A stretch of 63,519 nucleotides of DNA, the filler included, from Octopus bimaculoides (lineage: Eukaryota), in the NCBI RefSeq assembly GCF_001194135.2. It is 4 parts of 4 records of this genome, joined end to end, with 100 filler letters (N's around TTAATTAATTAA, not from the genome) between each part and the next. Parts side by side here need not be neighbours in the genome. Positions count along the whole stretch, not along the records: positions 28,771 to 44,230 come from NC_068987.1; 3 more parts are not named here. One strand, written 5' to 3'. The notes under the pieces are model-generated. The model did no database searches, had not been told where the DNA came from, and worked only from the letters and a program-made list of their open reading frames with translations. Below, piece by piece: positions 28,771-37,988 of this stretch. The position numbers were made by a program, and so were the translations under genes. Position 1 is the first letter of the stretch, and each line of letters begins with the position of its first letter.

Positions 28771-29043
28771 AACCTAGGTATGGCTGTAAAAAAAGAAGGT
28801 AGAAGTTTTTATTTTTCATTACCTTCGAAATTGCTCTTAAATGTGGTTTTGGTCATTTACTTTATAATTGCCTTTAGATAAACCTAAATTTAGTACCCCT
28901 GTAAATTCATACTTAGCTTATATATAAAACAATATGGGTATCTTCACAACTTAAAATTAAATTGCTTAGATTATAATTAAATTAATATATAGTTATGTGT
29001 ATATATACACATATATGTATATACATATGTACATATATATATA

Positions 29044-29578
29044 TAATAAATCTCTGAGCGAGGTATAAACAGTAGCTGCATGATATCGTGAAGTATATTT
29101 GCCACCTAAATGTGGCTGACCTTTAAGCGTTGATGCTACTGTAGGTTGTAGCCCCAGGAAGACATCTCCTCCAGCTAGCTAATGACACATTTTCTGTGCC
29201 TTATCAGTATTTGTGAAGGGAAGTCATCTTTCCAATCACCAACCTGATGCGATGCACACGGACCCAAGTTTCTAGTTATTGACCCGTTATCAGCATGTGA
29301 CAACCACCGGCTGGCGATGGGAAATGATTCTCAATGCAAATATATATACTTTTTCCAGTGACGAAAAGTCACTGATCTCGAAAAAGTGGAAACAAGCAAT
29401 AATAAATCTCTGAGCGAGGTATGAACAGTAGCTGCACGACATTGGGAAATATATTTGCCACCTAAATGTGGCTAACCCTTAAGGGTTGATGCTACTGTAG
29501 CTTGTAGCCTCAGGTAGACATCTCCAGCTGGCTATTGACACACTTTCTGTGCCCTATCAGTATTTGCAAAGGGAAGGC
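29044..29578. repeat. Two ~180-bp direct repeats separated by ~175 bp
   Basis: ATAATAAATCTCTGAGCGAGGTAT...TATCAGTATTTG..AAGGGAAG at ~29044-29224 and ~29399-29578. Confidence 0.85.
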
Positions 29579-29589
29579 AAATATACTTC

Positions 29590-29925
29590 ATTTACTGGCA
29601 CTTTGCTGGTGGCACATGAAAAAACATTCGAGTGAGGTCATTGCCAGTGCTGCTGGACTGGCTCCTGTGCAGGTGACACATAAAAAGACACCATTTGTGT
29701 GTGGCTGTTGCCAGTACTGTCTTACTGGCCCTCGTGCCGGTGGCACGTAAAAGCACCCACTACACTCTCGGAGTGGTTGGCGTAAGGAACGGCATCCAGC
29801 TGTAGAAACTCTGCCAGATCAGATTGGAGCCTGGTGCAGCCATCTGGTTCGCCAGTCCTCAGTCAAATCGTCCAACCCATGCTAGCATGGAAAGTGGACG
29901 TTAAACGATGATGATGATGATGATA
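29590..29925 (+). mobile_element. Family C retroposon
   Basis: Matches family C units, 3' end and (GAT)n tail. Confidence 0.85.
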
Positions 29926-30299
29926 TTACTATATATTTCCCTCTCACTTTATGCCAAACTAGCTTCTTAACTCATACTTTTATTTATACCTAAGCATAGT
30001 CAATGTATTACCTATCTATACTTATTAAAAAAATTTTTATTACTCTCATTCGTAGCTCCATTATCTCCCCTACATTGTTATTTTCAGTTTACCTCTAATT
30101 AAACCTCTGAACGTTCTTTTTAATATTTATAACCACAGCAAGTATTTACTATCTAAATTTGTAATATTAACAACTAATTTCCTATTTTTACCTTATATTT
30201 AATACATACAAACGAATATTAGTTTTTACACTAACACAACTCCATTTTATGTAGCTCTTTAAGCATTTCTACCCCTTAATACTTGTTTTCATTACATTC

Positions 30300-31150
30300 T
30301 AGCAGCCATCCATATACTTAATTCTTGAGTTTAATTTTATTATCACGTGCAATTTTTTAAAATACACACCACATCTAGTATTGTTTATAACTGTCAGGTC
30401 ATATCCTAATTCAAACGTAACTATGCTTTTCCATTGGACATTTCTATAAAACTTCCTTACATACCTAGCCCTCACACTAAATTTCTCACTGAAGTCATTG
30501 TTGACTCCCACTTTATTTACTGTGTCTTTGTACCTGGTTTGTACAGCTCTCACAAACTGTTCCTCAATGCTTAGTTTCCCTAGTGACCACAATATCACTA
30601 TTTGTGACACCCTTTCAAATGCCTTCTCCAAGTCAATGAATGACGGGATTAATGGTTTGCTTTTTGTATAACTTGATTAACTATTTAGGTGGTAATCCTG
30701 TACTGGATATTTTGAGCATCTCAGCAATTATCTCTGATGGGCCTTCTCTGTCTCTCTTCCTGTCCTCAATTGCCTTAGTTACTTCACTGCTATCAATTTG
30801 AATTGCTGGTCCCTCTTTAAGTTCAGTATAAGGTAGTGCCCCTTTATCCCAGGCATTCTCCATGCTCTTAACAGCCTCTCATAATAGCAATTCTATATCA
30901 CTTTCTTGTCTTCCACAATGATGACAAGTATGCCTTCATCATTTCAAATACATTTCTCACCATTGACATTTTGGTTCTCTCTCATGTGATTTTGAACACT
31001 TCACACCTCTGATCCTCACATTGCAAGACATGCACCAGCCTGTTCCTCTCTGCTTCACCCTTAGCCAACCATACCAGTCACCTAGTTGTCCTTCTAGTTA
31101 TTTGGTAATGCTGCCTACTACCACTTTGCTTCCTTTTTTTCCTTCCAAGA
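30300..31150 (-). mobile_element. Degenerate RTE-clade LINE fragment (linker and RT start)
   Basis: EGPAIQIDSSEVTKAI...GPSEIIAEMLK; (D)LEKAFERV...LWSLGKL..EEQFVRAVQTRY. Confidence 0.75.
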
Positions 31151-32451
31151 TCCACTCCCAAATTTTATGAAAATCTGTATTAGTTGATATCGTTGGAGTT
31201 ATCTCTTTTATTCATTATTTTTAGCTTTTAAGACCTTTTGGAGAAAGTTTAGTTTGCAAAGGTGATTTCAGTTAATGGAAATTTTTCAACTCACCATATT
31301 ACGTATGTGATACTCTATTGTGCATGTCATACTTACATGAGCGGGATTTTTTTTTCTGAGAGAATTTATGGTCAGTATTAGAATGTCTTTTGTACACTAC
31401 TAACTATTACAGCCATGAATATCTGAAAAAATGATGTTACCACTCATATTGCTGGTTTTGTTTTTATATATAAACAATTGATCATATATCAAATATGTTG
31501 AATAGAGCTGCTAAAGTGAGCTGGGTATTTAATATCCAGAGAACTTGTAAAAGTTGCAAAGAAATTTATTTTGCTCAGTAGTCATTGATTAAAAAAAAAT
31601 TGTAATTTTTGAGTTTCTAGAGCAGACATCAAAATAAGTAATCAGTTAAATAGAAAAACATGATATGAATAGTGACACTTAATTTTGTTTGGTGGGGATG
31701 TCATTACATTAGATGGGTTAGAATGTGGTCATGGTGCATAATAAACTGTCAATATGTTCTGTTTCATATTGTCTTGCACATCAAAACTTAGATAATTAAT
31801 TTTCAATCCTGGAGCCTTAATTTATTGTAGTAGTGTTAAAAGTAAGGTAGTTATGTGTGCAATTCTATTTGTGGCCAAAACTTATAGGAAGTCATAAAGT
31901 TATCATAGTAAGTTAACAAAACACTGATCAGTTTTACAGTGTTACTGGTAATGTTTACAACTGTAAACCATACCACTCCATTTCAACTACTTACCTACTG
32001 CAGCTAGGTGATTGAAGCAGTTCAGAGTTAAATAAGTATCTTGGTCATGCTTACAGTACGGTTCTAGTAACAGAGTATGAACTACAAATCCTATGACTGA
32101 TGTCTAGAAGCATATAATCTATGACTCTCATTAATATACTTCTACACTATTTCACAGTAGGGAGCCATTACATTCTGTGATATATACTCATAATAAAGTA
32201 GACAGTACTACTGGGAGTTAAATGTGTGTATAGGCCCTCAACCTATACACTTGTTACCATATGCCAGGATATAATTTGTTGACAACCTCAGCTTCTTGTT
32301 TTATACTCTTGTTTTTACAGTACTCTACTGTTTTTGTTATCTGTTGCATTCAGACATTGGTAACATATAAGAAATATTAAAATCTTAACAAATGTGCACT
32401 AACCAAACCAGAGTATTTTTGTGACAATTGATTAATCTGTTACTTTTACAG

Positions 32452-32522
32452 AGATAGAAAAAGCCCTGTTAGCAGAAGAAGAAGTAGTTCTAGAAACAGA
32501 GATCGCCGCCATCGTTCACCTG
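32452..32522 (+). CDS. PRPF38A: Internal coding exon (71 nt, phase 2 to 1), RS domain of probable pre-mRNA splicing factor 38A
   Basis: ttttacag|...|gtaagt; (R)DRKSPVSRRRSSSRNRDRRHRSP; splices in frame to the next two exons; Prp38 domain itself not in the window. Confidence 0.7.
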
Positions 32523-33030
32523 GTAAGTACCTTTTAATGTTAAAACATTTATTTCTTATTAAAGTATAATTATGTTTCATTGTTTGTGTTTAGAGTTCTA
32601 ATTAGGTGGAGCAGTAGTTTTAAGTAAATAAGTGCCTTAACCTTCCCTCTGAGAAATACTTGTCATTGCTTACACTTTCTTCTTGTACATTTTCATTCAT
32701 TATTCTCCCACTTACTGTCTGGTATACTCACCTCTCTCACATGTTATACTTAGTCCTTTTCATGTCAGAAGATGTTATAACACCTTCATGTTAGTCAACC
32801 AAATCCATTCTATGTTTCAGTTTCTGCACTTTCCCTCATTTCTTTCTTATCTTTTCTTCTGGATATGTGTCTTGCTCATCATAGAAGTAACTTCAGAGTT
32901 TTACTGGCCATTTTAGAATAGACAATGTTTGGCTAAAATCTGAAGCAATAAGCTGTTATTTTATCCACTTCATTAATTCACTTTCAAATTTAAAGATGTT
33001 GACTGAAAAATGTTTGCTTCTGTTTTTCAG

Positions 33031-33055
33031 TTACAAGGCACAGAGATGATGACAG
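33031..33055 (+). CDS. PRPF38A: 25-nt coding microexon (phase 1 to 2)
   Basis: tgtttttcag|TTACAAGGCACAGAGATGATGACAG|gtaac; (V)TRHRDDD(R); required to keep the frame between the flanking exons. Confidence 0.7.
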
Positions 33056-34650
33056 GTAACTAAAACATTAATTAAACTTTATGTTGATTGTTTATTTTTA
33101 TCTTATGCTTATTTGATGTCAATTACTTTATCATGTTTGTTAAGCAAAATATTCTTTCTACTGTGTGTTTGCTAAGACATGTTTGTTTATGTTAATATTG
33201 TTGAAACAAATATGAGATGGGGTGAGAGCAAGATTTTAAATTTGGATAACAGCTTTATGAGTGGTAGTGGCATAATAAATACAAGCATTTATTCCATTGA
33301 TTGTAGAAAGGCCTTCAAACAGTAAGATCATTAGCCACAGGTGAGAAAATACTATATTCCACACTAATGTATTTCGAAAATCAACATACCACTCAAGGGG
33401 CCATGAAGTGCAGATGTATACATGCATTACTTATTTTATGTACTATATTCAGGATAATTAGTCCATTACCTTCATAATATTCATTTTGCCATGCAGAAAT
33501 GAAGCACAAATTATATATCTTCTCATATATGAAGCTAAACATTCTGATCACTTCTTCCTATATCAACCTAGCTCTTCTTTTGATCTGGGAGTCCTTCACT
33601 TGACAATGGAGACCTTCCACTGTCAGCATATTTCACCCAACATGTGTCATCCATACATCATGTGCAGCCATAACAGTACAGCTGCTTCCTCTCCAACATA
33701 CATCAAGTTACACCTTTTAATGTCCAGCCACTCTTCTCATCTTATTTATGCTGTCTTTGGGCATTCAGTAGATTATATTCTATTCACTTCTCATTGCCAA
33801 AGTTTTATTATTATTAGTATTACTACTGCTTCTACTGAGGCAGCAGGCTGGCAGAATCATTAGCATGCTTAGTGGAATTTTGTCCATCTTTATGTTCTAA
33901 GTAAATTCTACTTAGATCAATTTTGCCTTTCATCCTTTTGGGGGTCTATAAAATAAGTACCAGTCTAGCATTGGGGCTGATAAAATTGACTAAACCCCTT
34001 TCAGGCCTTGTGCCTATAGAAGAAAGGATTATTATTATTACAACACTTTTCACAAAGCATCACCTTTCACTTAGGTTTACTGGGTGGTACAACACAATAT
34101 TATTCACTGTCCTTTCTATTTGGAGAATAGAAAAATAAAAAAGTAAAATCAGATTGTGTAATTTCTATATTTGAAAAGGTTAATCAGAAATCTAAATAGT
34201 TAAAAACAACAAGCCAACAATATATATATCAATACAAATGTTGAGTGAAAATTAATTTTACATTTACATGTAAATAAAATGGAACTTTGTAGTATACCAG
34301 ATTAACAAAAGCAAAAAGACAGGTTACTGGCTTGATCCACTGTAAACTTATTACCTGCTACTTACATACACTCACATTTGCATTTCCCTCTTGCCTTCCC
34401 TCTCCTTCTTTCTTACACTCCATCTTCCTTCTGTCTCCCCCATTTTCACTTCCTTCTCTTTCCTTCATTTCTCCTTTTTCTCTCATATTCCTTTCTTCCC
34501 TCTCATAACTTCCACTCCTTCTCTTATAATTTCTCTCTTTCTCTTTACCCGTTCCTCTTTCTCCAACAAAAGCACATATACAGATATGCTATATCTAACT
34601 TTATATTTTATATTTTTGCTACTTTTAAAAATATTTTCATAAAATTTCAG

Positions 34651-34852
34651 AAAGAAACGCAATAAGAAAGCCAAACGGGATCACAGAGAACGCAACCGAG
34701 ATACTGACAGGCACCGGGATAGAGGCCGTGAGCGTGAACGTGACCGTGATGACAAGAGAGACAGAGACAGAGGTCATAGAGGGGGCCGTGACGAGATTCG
34801 AGAGGCCAATGAACTCAGAGCCAGGCTTGGGATGGCCCCTCTTAGGCCTTAG
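34651..34852 (+). CDS. PRPF38A: Terminal coding exon: RD repeats plus C-terminal HIND motif
   Basis: aaatttcag|; KKRNKKAKRDHRERNRDTDRHRDRGRERERDRDDKRDRDRGHRGGRDEIREANELRARLGMAPLRP*; TAG at 34850-34852. Confidence 0.75.
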
Positions 34853-34930
34853 TGTGAATGCATTCAAGCTTTAGTGTTTGTACAAACATTAAAACCAAAG
34901 GAAACCACTCCAGTTCATCATCTCTTTGTA

Positions 34931-34936
34931 AATAAA
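34931..34936 (+). promoter_or_regulatory. Candidate polyadenylation signal AATAAA
   Basis: 79 nt after the stop, followed by a T-rich tract. Confidence 0.5.
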
Positions 34937-36959
34937 TTCATCTTTGTTATAAACTTATCATTTTTATTAATTCCTCATTGTTATTAATTTATCAACTTTC
35001 TATTTTCTCTCTGTCTTAGTTATTAGTACTAGTGGTCAAAGGACAGTGCATTGATATAATTGTTAAAGCATCAAACAAAATACTTTGTAGTTGTTTCGTC
35101 TCTTCATGTTCTGAGTTCAAATTCCACTGAAGTCAACTTGCCTTTCATCCTTCTGGTATCAATAAAATAAAGTACCAGTGAAGTATTGGGATCAAATATT
35201 ATCAACTCCCTCACCCCCCCCCCNNNNNNNNNNNNNNNNNNNNNNNNNNNNNNNNNCCCCCCCCATTTGCATATTTTAGAAACAGTTGTTATTGTTATTA
35301 TTTCTTGCATAGGTGCTAGGCTAGTAATTTAGATGTGGGAAAACAACCAATGACATTAGTCCACTATTTCAGGTTGGAGGGATGGAAAACAAAAACAGAT
35401 CTTGCAAAGTTAATTTTGACTTTCATCTTGATGGGGGTCAATAAAATAAATATCAGTCAACTGTCCCCCATCCCAAATTTCAGGCCTCGTGTCTATGGTA
35501 AGAAAATATTATTAAGGCAGTATGCTGGCAGAATTGTTAGCACCTTGAACAAAATGCTTAGTAGCATTTCTCCTGAGCTTAAATACTGCCAAAGTCAACT
35601 TGCCTTTCATGCTTTAAAGATTTATGAAATGAATGAATACCAGTCAAGTACTTAGGGCTAGTGATATTGACTAACCCTGACCCCTCAAAATTGTTGGCTA
35701 AGTACCAGTTGTTGTTTTGTTATCAGTAACATGTCACTTCAAGTTGCTTGTAAATTTTGTCTGCTTTAACTATTTCAAAAGACTGTTTACAACTGTTTAC
35801 TCTGTGTTTCTTGTAAAGTGACCAAGCTTCTGAGGAGTTCCTCAGTTTCATTGTACTTTCACCTTTTGGGATAGAATTGTAGTTATCTGTGTGAAATTTA
35901 CATGTTTCTTTTTTAAAAATTTCAAAGCATCACATCAAAATATTCGACAGAAAACCAGAGGAATTTAAACATGGATTGGAACAACAATGTTAACACTGCC
36001 TTCTACACATTAAACCAAAGTACTGCCTCCACCAGTTCCAACAGAAATATTCCTTTCTACTATAGGCTCAAAGCCGGAAATTTTGGGGGAGGGGTTGTCA
36101 GTTACATTGACCCCAGTGTTCAACTGGTACTTATTTCATTGATTCTGAAAGGATGAAAGGCAAAGTTGACATCAACAGAATTTGAATCCAGAACAGAAAG
36201 ATGAACAAAATGCCATTGAAAATTTTGTCTGGCATGCTAATGATTTTGCAAGTTCACTGCCTTAGTGCCAACAGAAATAATGACAATGAAGATGAGAGCC
36301 ACAAAAACAAAATTAACACACCTGCTAATGATGCTAATGCAGAAATAATAACTACCATCATTACCATCACCACCAGCATTAACAGTAAAATAATAAATAA
36401 TGAAAACAGCATGCCAAAAATATCCATTGGTTGCAGTTTTATTGATATCTGCACAGAGGAAGAAAATTTTTGTATGTGATGACACAGACCATCTTAAGGT
36501 TTTCTGTCCACAGCAAAGGAGGGAAGAAGGCAAACCTCCACTACTGCTGATACCATCACCACATCAGCAACTGTAATGGTAAAATTAGCAGCCATGAAAG
36601 CAGCAACAAAAACATCAACAGTTGAAGCAACAGTAACAAAAGAAACACTATTCATTACCACCAGCAACAGCAACCGAAATCCACCAAATAACTAGAGAAC
36701 AAAAAGGCAAGCACCCCCAGAACATTCCCCTCCCAGCTTGGAACCATTGAAACATGTCATATAGCAAAGGTGACAAGAAAGAAACCAAATTGAAGGAGGC
36801 AATCAAGCAAAAAGAGAAAGAGAAAAAGGTCACCTCAACAAAAAAAGCTGGGAAGTTTGAACAGACAGAAGAAACACCTTCAACAACACCATCACCGCTA
36901 CTACCACAGTCATCATCAACATTGCAAATACTAACACAACCTAAAATCCACACTTAAAA

Positions 36960-37927: not shown

Positions 37928-37988
<61 letters not shown>

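What the first reader, a model, noticed from the sequence alone, without database searches (positions are those of the whole stretch)
34790..34852. HIND (Hub1/UBL5-binding) motif at the C-terminus of an apparent metazoan Prp38
Seen: DEIREANELRARLGMAPLRP*. Established: the SART1/Snu66 HIND reads like SIEETNKLRAKLGLKPL, with the conserved Arg. As I recall, a C-terminal HIND on Prp38 was described for plants, amoebozoans and Plasmodium, while human and yeast Prp38 lack it. The exon phase pattern (2-1, 1-2, last exon starting in phase 2) matches my recollection of the last PRPF38A exons. Inference: this lineage retains or regained a Prp38-HIND, possibly giving two Hub1 docking sites in the spliceosome.
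Basis: partly seen in the sequence, partly recalled or inferred. Interest (0 to 1): 0.7.

Follow-up and report, generated by a model that had tools for sequence, protein, structure and literature searches.

The report
Octopod PRPF38A tail with HIND motif
The flagged peptide is a real UBL5/Hub1-docking (HIND) motif at the end of an octopus-like splicing factor PRPF38A, but most invertebrate animals have this tail and it is already published for a nematode, so it is ordinary.

Summary
Window 34790-34852 (+) encodes DEIREANELRARLGMAPLRP followed by a stop. It closes the last of three canonically spliced exons: 32452-32522, 33031-33055 and 34651-34852. These exons match residues 239-333 of the annotated PRPF38A-like protein of the octopod Argonauta hians. 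That protein has an N-terminal PRP38 domain (Pfam E=5e-69). The match is 23/24, 9/9 and 79% identical for the three exons, with identical splice positions and dN/dS 0.05. The Prp38-domain exons lie upstream of the piece's edge, so they cannot be seen in the window. The motif keeps the HIND arginine and six of the eight Hub1-contact positions of human SART1. AlphaFold2 predicts it as a confident helix. A survey of the 120 best-scoring PRPF38A-type proteins found the same C-terminal HIND in molluscs, an annelid, a brachiopod, a nemertean, a priapulid, a nematode, a scorpion, a sea spider, hemichordates and a tunicate. It is absent in vertebrates, insects, spiders and a tick. The lineage therefore retains an ancestral feature. 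A metazoan Prp38 HIND that binds UBL-5 was published for C. elegans in 2022. UBL5 binding by this tail, and whether cephalopod SART1 also has a HIND, remain untested. Verdict: correct reading, low novelty.

The parts
32452..32522 (+). Antepenultimate coding exon of PRPF38A (71 nt, intron phases 2 then 1). It encodes (R)DRKSPVSRRRSSSRNRDRRHRSP(V), part of the RS-rich tail.
   Evidence: The acceptor is ttttacAG and the donor is G|gtaagt. It is 23/24 identical to Argonauta P0093 residues 239-262. DNA identity to L008 23347-23459 is 81.6%. Pinctada L006 has the same phases.
33031..33055 (+). A 25-nt microexon (phases 1 then 2) encoding (V)TRHRDDD(R).
   Evidence: The splice sites are tttttcAG|TT...ACAG|gtaac. 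It is 9/9 identical to P0093 residues 263-271. DNA identity to L008 25993-26057 is 87.7%. Pinctada has an equivalent 28-nt microexon encoding DKRRKDDDD.
34651..34852 (+). Last coding exon (starts in phase 2). It encodes an RD/RK-rich stretch followed by the HIND and the stop codon.
   Evidence: The acceptor is atttcAG|A. It is 79% identical to P0093 residues 271-332, with one 4-residue indel. The last intron splits an Arg codon as AG|A or AG|G before K[KHS] at the same position in L002, L004, L006, L007 and L008.
34790..34849 (+). The HIND (Hub1/UBL5-interaction) motif DEIREANELRARLGMAPLRP at the extreme C-terminus.
   Evidence: It hits Pfam PF19252 with E=6.4e-4 and 19.5 bits, against a gathering score of 25. 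A, N, L, R, A, L, G, P and L are invariant in 28 aligned terminal-exon peptides. AlphaFold2 predicts a helix with mean pLDDT 95 for residues 51-60 of the exon product. It aligns to yeast Snu66 HIND-I and HIND-II.
34817..34819 (+). Codon AGA for the conserved HIND arginine, equivalent to R127 of human SART1, the partner of Hub1 Asp22.
   Evidence: The assignment rests on alignment with SLSIEETNKLRAKLGLKPL and the contact list in PMC4141198. The residue is invariant in alignment A3.
34931..34936 (+). AATAAA, a candidate polyadenylation signal 79 nt after the stop codon (inference only).
   Evidence: It was read directly from the sequence. No transcript evidence is available.

Best explanation
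The window holds the last three coding exons of the PRPF38A (Prp38) gene of an octopod-like cephalopod. The protein ends in a HIND, a short amphipathic helix (EIREANELRARLG) followed by MAPLRP. By analogy with solved HIND-Hub1 complexes, this helix docks the ubiquitin-like protein UBL5/Hub1 non-covalently. The docking would use a salt bridge between the HIND arginine (codon 34817-34819) and UBL5 Asp22, plus hydrophobic contacts from I, L, L, M and L. This would tether UBL5 to Prp38, a B-complex-specific spliceosome protein. Shown here: the sequence, the splice structure, orthology to an annotated PRPF38A, purifying selection, the helix prediction and the phylogenetic distribution. Inferred: UBL5 binding and its role in recruiting UBL5 to the spliceosome. 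The tail is an ancestral metazoan feature kept in this lineage and lost in vertebrates, insects, spiders and ticks.
For: The peptide and splice sites are as stated. Argonauta hians 'pre-mRNA-splicing factor 38A-like isoform X1' (P0093, 333 aa) has a PF03371 PRP38 domain with E=5e-69. Its residues 239-333 match the three window exons colinearly: 23/24, 9/9 and 79% identical. At the DNA level only these three exons, plus interspersed repeats, are conserved with the Argonauta locus L008, and in the same order. Splice positions are identical, and dN/dS is 0.046, with 36 of 48 differing codons synonymous. All seven independent loci fetched around HIND-ending terminal ORFs carry Prp38-domain exons or ORFs upstream on the same strand: L004-L007 and L010-L012, including Pinctada imbricata. 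For the HIND itself, Pfam gives E=6.4e-4 and the only PDB hit is yeast Snu66 HIND-I/II. Of the eight human SART1 contact residues, five are identical and one is conservative (M for L), and the key Arg is kept (PMC4141198). AlphaFold2 gives pLDDT 95 on the HIND helix. Prp38 HINDs bind Hub1/UBL5 in Arabidopsis (PMC6857937) and C. elegans (GST pull-down, PMC7615767).
Against: The Prp38-domain exons are not in the piece. The physical link between this tail and a Prp38 domain therefore rests on orthology, not on contiguous sequence or a transcript. The Pfam HIND score (19.5 bits) is below the curated cut-off of 25, and only profile positions 10-21 of 25 match. Two human contact positions differ: L118 is D here and T123 is A. 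The C. elegans PRP-38 HIND gave no yeast two-hybrid signal and was positive only in a lysate pull-down, so Prp38-type HINDs may bind weakly. In the human B complex UBL5 Asp22 contacts MFAP1 R358 (PMC10943123), so HIND binding can only be one transient step.
Confidence: 0.85

Rival explanations
1. The tail is a genuine PRPF38A C-terminus, but the HIND-like sequence no longer binds UBL5, or binds too weakly to matter. It would then be conserved for another reason, such as another partner or nuclear targeting.
For: The Pfam score is below threshold. Two contact positions are substituted: L118 to D and T123 to A. The C. elegans PRP-38 HIND was negative in yeast two-hybrid assays.
Against: The Arg and the hydrophobic register are invariant across phyla. 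Selection is strongly purifying. Prp38 HINDs from Arabidopsis and C. elegans do bind Hub1/UBL5, and according to those papers so does the Plasmodium one.
Confidence: 0.1
2. The three exons are a partial duplicate or decaying copy of the 3' end of PRPF38A, not the functional gene.
For: The upstream exon (P0093 residues about 199-238) is not found in the 3.7 kb before exon 32452, whereas the corresponding Argonauta intron is only about 1.3 kb. The Argonauta assembly has two loci encoding the same protein.
Against: The reading frame is intact, all splice sites are canonical, and dN/dS is 0.046 against Argonauta. The intron holds repeat insertions that can explain its greater length. Intron sizes differ widely between the two species for the other introns too.
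Confidence: 0.04
3. The exons belong to a different RS-rich gene (SART1/Snu66 or another) that happens to carry a HIND.
For: Within the window itself no Prp38 domain is visible. The PRP38_assoc Pfam hit is insignificant, with E between 0.5 and 1.
Against: There is a colinear 98-residue match to annotated Argonauta PRPF38A, including a 9/9 microexon. SART1 HINDs are N-terminal or internal and read S[IV]EETN, not a C-terminal EIxEAN. All seven C-terminal-HIND loci examined were Prp38.
Confidence: 0.01

Closest known systems
Argonauta hians pre-mRNA-splicing factor 38A-like isoform X1 (P0093; NCBI annotation of GCA_054771915.1)
   Same: It has the same three terminal exons, splice positions and phases. 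About 87% of the last 98 residues are identical, and the segment GHRGGRDEIREANELRARLG is identical.
   Different: The species differs, with dS about 1.6. There is a 4-residue indel in the RD-rich stretch, and the ending is ...LGLNPLRT rather than ...LGMAPLRP. Intron lengths differ.
C. elegans PRP-38 C-terminal HIND (PMC7615767)
   Same: It is a metazoan Prp38 with a C-terminal HIND. It is reported to pull down UBL-5, and C. elegans SART-1 also has a HIND.
   Different: It comes from a nematode, not a mollusc. I did not have its sequence. Binding was weak: yeast two-hybrid assays were negative. Nothing has been tested experimentally for cephalopods.
Arabidopsis thaliana and Plasmodium falciparum Prp38 HINDs (Mishra et al. 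2011, as cited in PMC4141198, PMC6857937 and PMC8431670)
   Same: The HIND sits at the C-terminal end of Prp38 and has the conserved Arg. It binds Hub1/UBL5.
   Different: These are not metazoans. In plants Snu66 lacks a HIND, so Prp38 is the sole HIND carrier. The situation for cephalopod SART1 is unknown.
Human SART1/hSnu66 HIND, SLSIEETNKLRAKLGLKPL (PDB 4PYU), and yeast Snu66 HIND-I/II (PDB 3PLV; 5NRL chain E)
   Same: They share the core I-x-E-x-N-x-L-R-A-x-L-G-[LM]-x-P-L, the same Arg and a helical conformation.
   Different: The host protein differs (Snu66, not Prp38). Their position is N-terminal rather than at the extreme C-terminus. They read S-I-E-E-T-N rather than E-I-R-E-A-N, and the L118-equivalent residue is D here.
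Vertebrate PRPF38A
   Same: The Prp38 domain and RS tail are orthologous; the invertebrate query is 81-84% identical to vertebrate proteins over the domain.
   Different: It ends ...SPERSKKSHKKSRRGNE with no HIND in mammals, birds, frogs and fish. Lamprey and hagfish end ...KRSHKGE, also without a HIND.

Membership tests
PRPF38A / Prp38 (Pfam PF03371 family) | An N-terminal PRP38 domain encoded by the same gene. | not testable with these tools
   The piece starts at 28771, and no Prp38-domain exon lies in 28771-34650. In the ortholog P0093 the domain is present with E=5e-69. In the Argonauta locus it lies 4-20 kb upstream of the RS exon.
PRPF38A / Prp38 (Pfam PF03371 family) | A C-terminal RS/RD tail colinear with that of an annotated PRPF38A ortholog. 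| tested here: met
   The window exons match P0093 residues 239-262 (23/24), 263-271 (9/9) and 271-332 (79%).
PRPF38A / Prp38 (Pfam PF03371 family) | Conserved exon-intron structure at the 3' end of the gene. | tested here: met
   Splice positions and phases are identical to Argonauta L008. Pinctada L006 shows the same 2-1 / 1-2 / 2-end pattern, and the last intron is at the same position in L002, L004 and L007.
HIND (Hub1-interaction domain; Pfam PF19252) | Score against the Pfam HIND profile. This is an operational criterion, not the biological definition. | tested here: inconclusive
   E=6.4e-4 and 19.5 bits against a gathering score of 25, over profile positions 10-21 of 25. Nine of the ten annotated metazoan PRPF38A proteins scanned score 14.6-19.5 bits, all below the cut-off, and one showed no hit. 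Only the S-V-A-E-T-N variant of oysters carries a precomputed PF19252 hit.
HIND (Hub1-interaction domain; Pfam PF19252) | The conserved arginine that forms a salt bridge with Hub1/UBL5 Asp22 (R127 of human SART1). | tested here: met
   The R in ELRARLG (codon 34817-34819) aligns with R127. It is invariant in 28 of 28 aligned tails.
HIND (Hub1-interaction domain; Pfam PF19252) | The hydrophobic contact register (human L118, I120, T123, L126, L130, L132, L135). | tested here: met
   The window has D, I, A, L, L, M, L at these positions. Four of the seven are identical, M for L is conservative, T to A is a small change, and L118 to D is lost.
HIND (Hub1-interaction domain; Pfam PF19252) | An alpha-helical peptide. 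| tested here: met
   AlphaFold2 with a 28-sequence alignment predicts a helix up to L59 of the exon product. Mean pLDDT is 95 for residues 51-60, against about 60 for the RD-rich part. This is a prediction only.
HIND (Hub1-interaction domain; Pfam PF19252) | Direct non-covalent binding of Hub1/UBL5. | not testable with these tools
   This needs a pull-down, ITC or a complex prediction. Only single chains from the window could be submitted for structure prediction.
HIND (Hub1-interaction domain; Pfam PF19252) | Carried by the spliceosomal (tri-snRNP / B-complex) protein Snu66 or Prp38. | tested here: met
   The host is PRPF38A by orthology. All seven C-terminal-HIND loci examined were Prp38.

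The most novel reading that the evidence does not exclude
The papers read here treat a Prp38 HIND in animals as a peculiarity of C. elegans, alongside Plasmodium. The survey here suggests instead that a C-terminal 'EI-x-EAN-x-LRA-x-LG-x-PL' HIND on PRPF38A is the ancestral and prevailing state in Bilateria. It is seen in molluscs, an annelid, a brachiopod, a nemertean, a priapulid, a nematode, a scorpion, a sea spider, hemichordates and a tunicate. It appears to have been lost independently in vertebrates, insects and spiders/ticks. This subtype is also missed systematically by the Pfam HIND threshold. If SART1 keeps its HIND in these lineages, two UBL5 docking sites per spliceosome would be the metazoan norm, and the single-site vertebrate arrangement would be the derived state.
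Probability: 0.4. Interest if true: 0.3.

Novelty: already known. Interest (0 to 1): 0.15.

Why it matters
It matters little for this locus. The exons are the expected 3' end of a conserved splicing-factor gene, and its close relative is already annotated. Three practical points follow. First, automated annotation under-calls this motif: Pfam scores are below threshold, and in Pinctada imbricata the HIND exon is annotated as a separate 66-residue protein. Second, vertebrates and insects, including the usual model organisms, are the lineages in which PRPF38A lacks a HIND. Third, anyone studying UBL5 recruitment to the spliceosome in invertebrates should consider Prp38 as well as SART1 as a docking site.

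Tried and rejected
(1) tblastn of human PRPF38A (recalled from memory, used only as a lead) against the piece found no Prp38 domain, so the link had to come from relatives.
(2) The first protein search, with the low-complexity tail as a single query, found nothing at E<=0.01.
(3) An exhaustive phmmer search with the last exon found only two terminal-exon fragments. A three-sequence profile then found 84, all of them short ORF calls on eukaryotic contigs.
(5) Mishra et al. 2011 (PMID 21614000, PMC3587138) is not held, so its supplementary species list could not be checked.
(6) I tried to find SART1-type HIND loci in order to test the 'two docking sites' idea. The S[IV][EQ]ESNAMRAKLGLKPLK* candidates P0045 and P0035 turned out to be Prp38 C-termini as well. 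No cephalopod SART1 was reachable.
(7) Rfam and ARAGORN scans of the piece found nothing.
(8) Pfam scans of the retroelement-like ORFs gave only weak RVT_1 hits.
(9) The PRP38_assoc (PF12871) match of the tail is insignificant, with E between 0.5 and 1, and I did not use it as evidence.
(10) The antisense stop-free stretches over the last exon (34640-34870, minus strand) were considered and dismissed. They are a by-product of the stop-poor RD-rich coding sequence, and nothing supports them.

Full report
**Observation.** The peptide ends a stop-free stretch that begins at a canonical acceptor (atttcAG|A, exon start 34651). Upstream lie a 25-nt microexon at 33031-33055 (tttttcAG|TT...ACAG|gtaac) and an RS-rich exon at 32452-32522 (ttttacAG|A...CCTG|gtaagt). 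Joined, they read (R)DRKSPVSRRRSSSRNRDRRHRSP-VTRHRDDDR-KKRNKKAKRDHRERNRDTDRHRDRGRERERDRDDKRDRDRGHRGGRDEIREANELRARLGMAPLRP*.

**Is it a HIND?** The 24-residue tail hits Pfam PF19252 (HIND) with E=6.4e-4. The score is 19.5 bits, below the curated cut-off of 25, and covers profile positions 10-21 of 25.
- The only PDB sequence match is yeast Snu66, where the window motif aligns to both HIND-I (SIEETNEIREKLGMKPI) and HIND-II (SIEETNELRASLGLKLI). The match is weak because it is short, E=0.095.
- The crystallised human SART1 HIND is SLSIEETNKLRAKLGLKPL, with contacts L118, I120, T123, L126, R127, L130, L132 and L135 and a salt bridge from R127 to Hub1 D22 (PMC4141198). At those positions the window has D, I, A, L, R, L, M, L. 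The arginine (codon 34817-34819) and most of the hydrophobic register are kept. L118 is lost and T123 is Ala.
- AlphaFold2 on the last-exon product with a 28-sequence alignment predicts a helix ending at ...RARL. Mean pLDDT is 95 over residues 51-60, against about 60 for the RD-rich region.

**Which gene?** No Prp38-domain exon lies in the piece, so the attachment had to be shown through relatives.
- An exhaustive phmmer search with the last exon found two terminal-exon fragments ending ...EANxLRAKLGLxPLRP*.
- A profile built from these found 84 more. All were short ORF calls on eukaryotic contigs, and most ended in EI-x-EAN-x-LRAKLG-x-PL.
- I fetched the flanking DNA for seven loci around such terminal ORFs: L004, L005, L006 (Pinctada imbricata), L007, L010, L011 and L012. 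Every one had Prp38-domain exons or PF03371-positive ORFs upstream on the same strand.
- In Pinctada the three terminal exons have the same phases and similar boundary sequences...RHRSPT|G, a microexon encoding DKRRKDDDD, then R|KSRRKH....

**Decisive match.** A search with an invertebrate Prp38 domain returned annotated full-length proteins. One is 'pre-mRNA-splicing factor 38A-like isoform X1 [Argonauta hians]' (P0093, 333 aa; an octopod).
- Its residues 239-262, 263-271 and 271-332 match the three window exons at 23/24, 9/9 and 79% identity. P0093 has a PRP38 domain with E=5e-69.
- In the Argonauta locus (L008) the gene spans about 24 kb in nine exons. The window and L008 share DNA similarity only at these three exons, in the same order, and at interspersed repeats.
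- Splice positions are identical. Over 92 aligned codons dN=0.074 and dS=1.62, so dN/dS is 0.046, and 36 of 48 differing codons are synonymous.
- The window is therefore the 3' end of PRPF38A from a cephalopod related to, but distinct from, Argonauta.
- The exon for residues about 199-238 must lie upstream of 28771. That intron is more than 3.7 kb here, against about 1.3 kb in Argonauta, and it contains repeat insertions.

**Distribution.** I inspected the C-termini of the 120 best Prp38 hits.
- A C-terminal HIND is present in molluscs: bivalves, gastropods, a chiton and the cephalopod. It is also present in Owenia (annelid), Lingula (brachiopod), Tubulanus (nemertean), Priapulus, Panagrolaimus (nematode), Centruroides (scorpion), Nymphon (sea spider), Ptychodera and Glandiceps (hemichordates) and Clavelina (tunicate).
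- It is absent from vertebrates, including lamprey and hagfish, and from insects, spiders and a tick.
- The simplest reading is an ancestral bilaterian feature with several losses. The cephalopod lineage retains it.

**Mechanism.**
- Shown here: a conserved, selectively constrained, predicted-helical C-terminal motif with the HIND arginine, on PRPF38A.
- From the literature: HINDs bind Hub1/UBL5 non-covalently through the Arg-Asp22 salt bridge and hydrophobic contacts (PMC4141198). Prp38 HINDs bind Hub1/UBL5 in Arabidopsis (PMC6857937) and in C. elegans, by GST pull-down but not by yeast two-hybrid (PMC7615767). Transplanting the HIND to other tri-snRNP proteins preserves Hub1 function in yeast (PMC8431670).
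- Inferred: this tail tethers UBL5 to Prp38, a B-complex-specific protein. In the human B complex UBL5 Asp22 contacts MFAP1 R358 (PMC10943123). HIND binding and the exon-channel position of UBL5 would therefore use the same surface, so the HIND is more likely a recruitment or hand-off site than a permanent anchor.

**Comparison and novelty.** The HIND on Prp38 has been known since 2011 for plants and Plasmodium, as cited. For a metazoan it was published in 2022, together with a SART-1 HIND in the same animal. The nearest relative's protein is already annotated. The finding is therefore a correct identification of an ordinary, already known feature.

The only mildly new points are two. First, the motif is broad across Bilateria, whereas the papers read here single out C. 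elegans. Second, this subtype is under-called by annotation: Pfam scores were 14.6-19.5 bits against a cut-off of 25 in nine of ten annotated orthologs scanned, and the HIND exon is split off as a separate protein in the Pinctada annotation.

**Untested.** UBL5 binding by this tail has not been tested.

Noticed in passing
window 29761-29924 (+) and 43007-43092 (-): An interspersed repeat of about 160 bp is present twice in the piece; the inverted arms 29848-29924 and 43016-43092 are 95% complementary. At least 25 copies lie in the Argonauta PRPF38A locus L008, so it looks like an octopod-wide SINE-like family. ARAGORN and Rfam found no tRNA-like part in it.
   Followed up: partly
window 40317-41060 (-), 41958-44089 (+), 30302-30878 (-): These are degenerate retroelement-like ORFs. 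Pfam RVT_1 hits are weak: E=1e-3 for 40866-41060 (-) and E=0.11 for 42590-42949 (+). The long ORFs at 41958-44089 look like a reverse-transcriptase element by eye, but no Pfam hit supports that.
   Followed up: partly
window 37930-37987; 35224-35256; 34477-34544; 34932-34994: There is a run of 58 T, a 33-N assembly gap, a CT-rich repeat of 20-nt period in the last intron just upstream of the HIND exon, and a repeat of 17-nt period starting 80 nt after the stop codon that overlaps the candidate AATAAA signal.
   Followed up: no
window 29043-29226 and 29399-29579: A direct repeat of about 185 bp (88-91% identity, spacing about 355 bp) lies in the intron upstream of the RS exon.
   Followed up: no
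L004 10121-10380 (ENA ERZ25069853, unknown invertebrate): The HIND-coding end of PRPF38A, its stop codon and about 25 nt of 3' sequence form a unit repeated three times in tandem (EIREANELRAKLGMAPLE*HLATSHSF*). Only the first copy is in frame with the CDS. It could be a recent tandem duplication or an assembly artefact.
   Followed up: partly
L006 9950-10201 (Pinctada imbricata VSWD01000010.1): The GenBank annotation calls the HIND-bearing last exon a separate 66-residue 'hypothetical protein FSP39_014824, partial'. Prp38-domain exons lie 1.7-5.6 kb upstream on the same strand, so this is probably a split gene model.
   Followed up: partly
P0086-P0186 (annotated metazoan PRPF38A proteins): Pfam PF19252 (HIND, gathering score 25) scores the Prp38-type EI-x-EAN HINDs at only 14.6-19.5 bits. 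Standard domain annotation therefore misses them. Only the oyster S-V-A-E-T-N variant carries a precomputed HIND hit.
   Followed up: yes
L008 and L009 (Argonauta hians GCA_054771915.1, contigs BAAFZT010000004.1 and BAAFZT010000078.1): Two loci encode the identical 333-residue PRPF38A with the same exon order but slightly different intron lengths. They could be a haplotig or a recent duplication.
   Followed up: no
L010, L011, L012: Terminal ORFs ending S[IV][EQ]ESNAMRAKLGLKPLK*, which look SART1-like, are in fact Prp38 C-termini in compact genomes: PF03371 ORFs lie 0.7-1.5 kb upstream. Neighbouring ORFs hit EsV_1_7_cys, which hints at a brown-alga or stramenopile source.
   Followed up: partly
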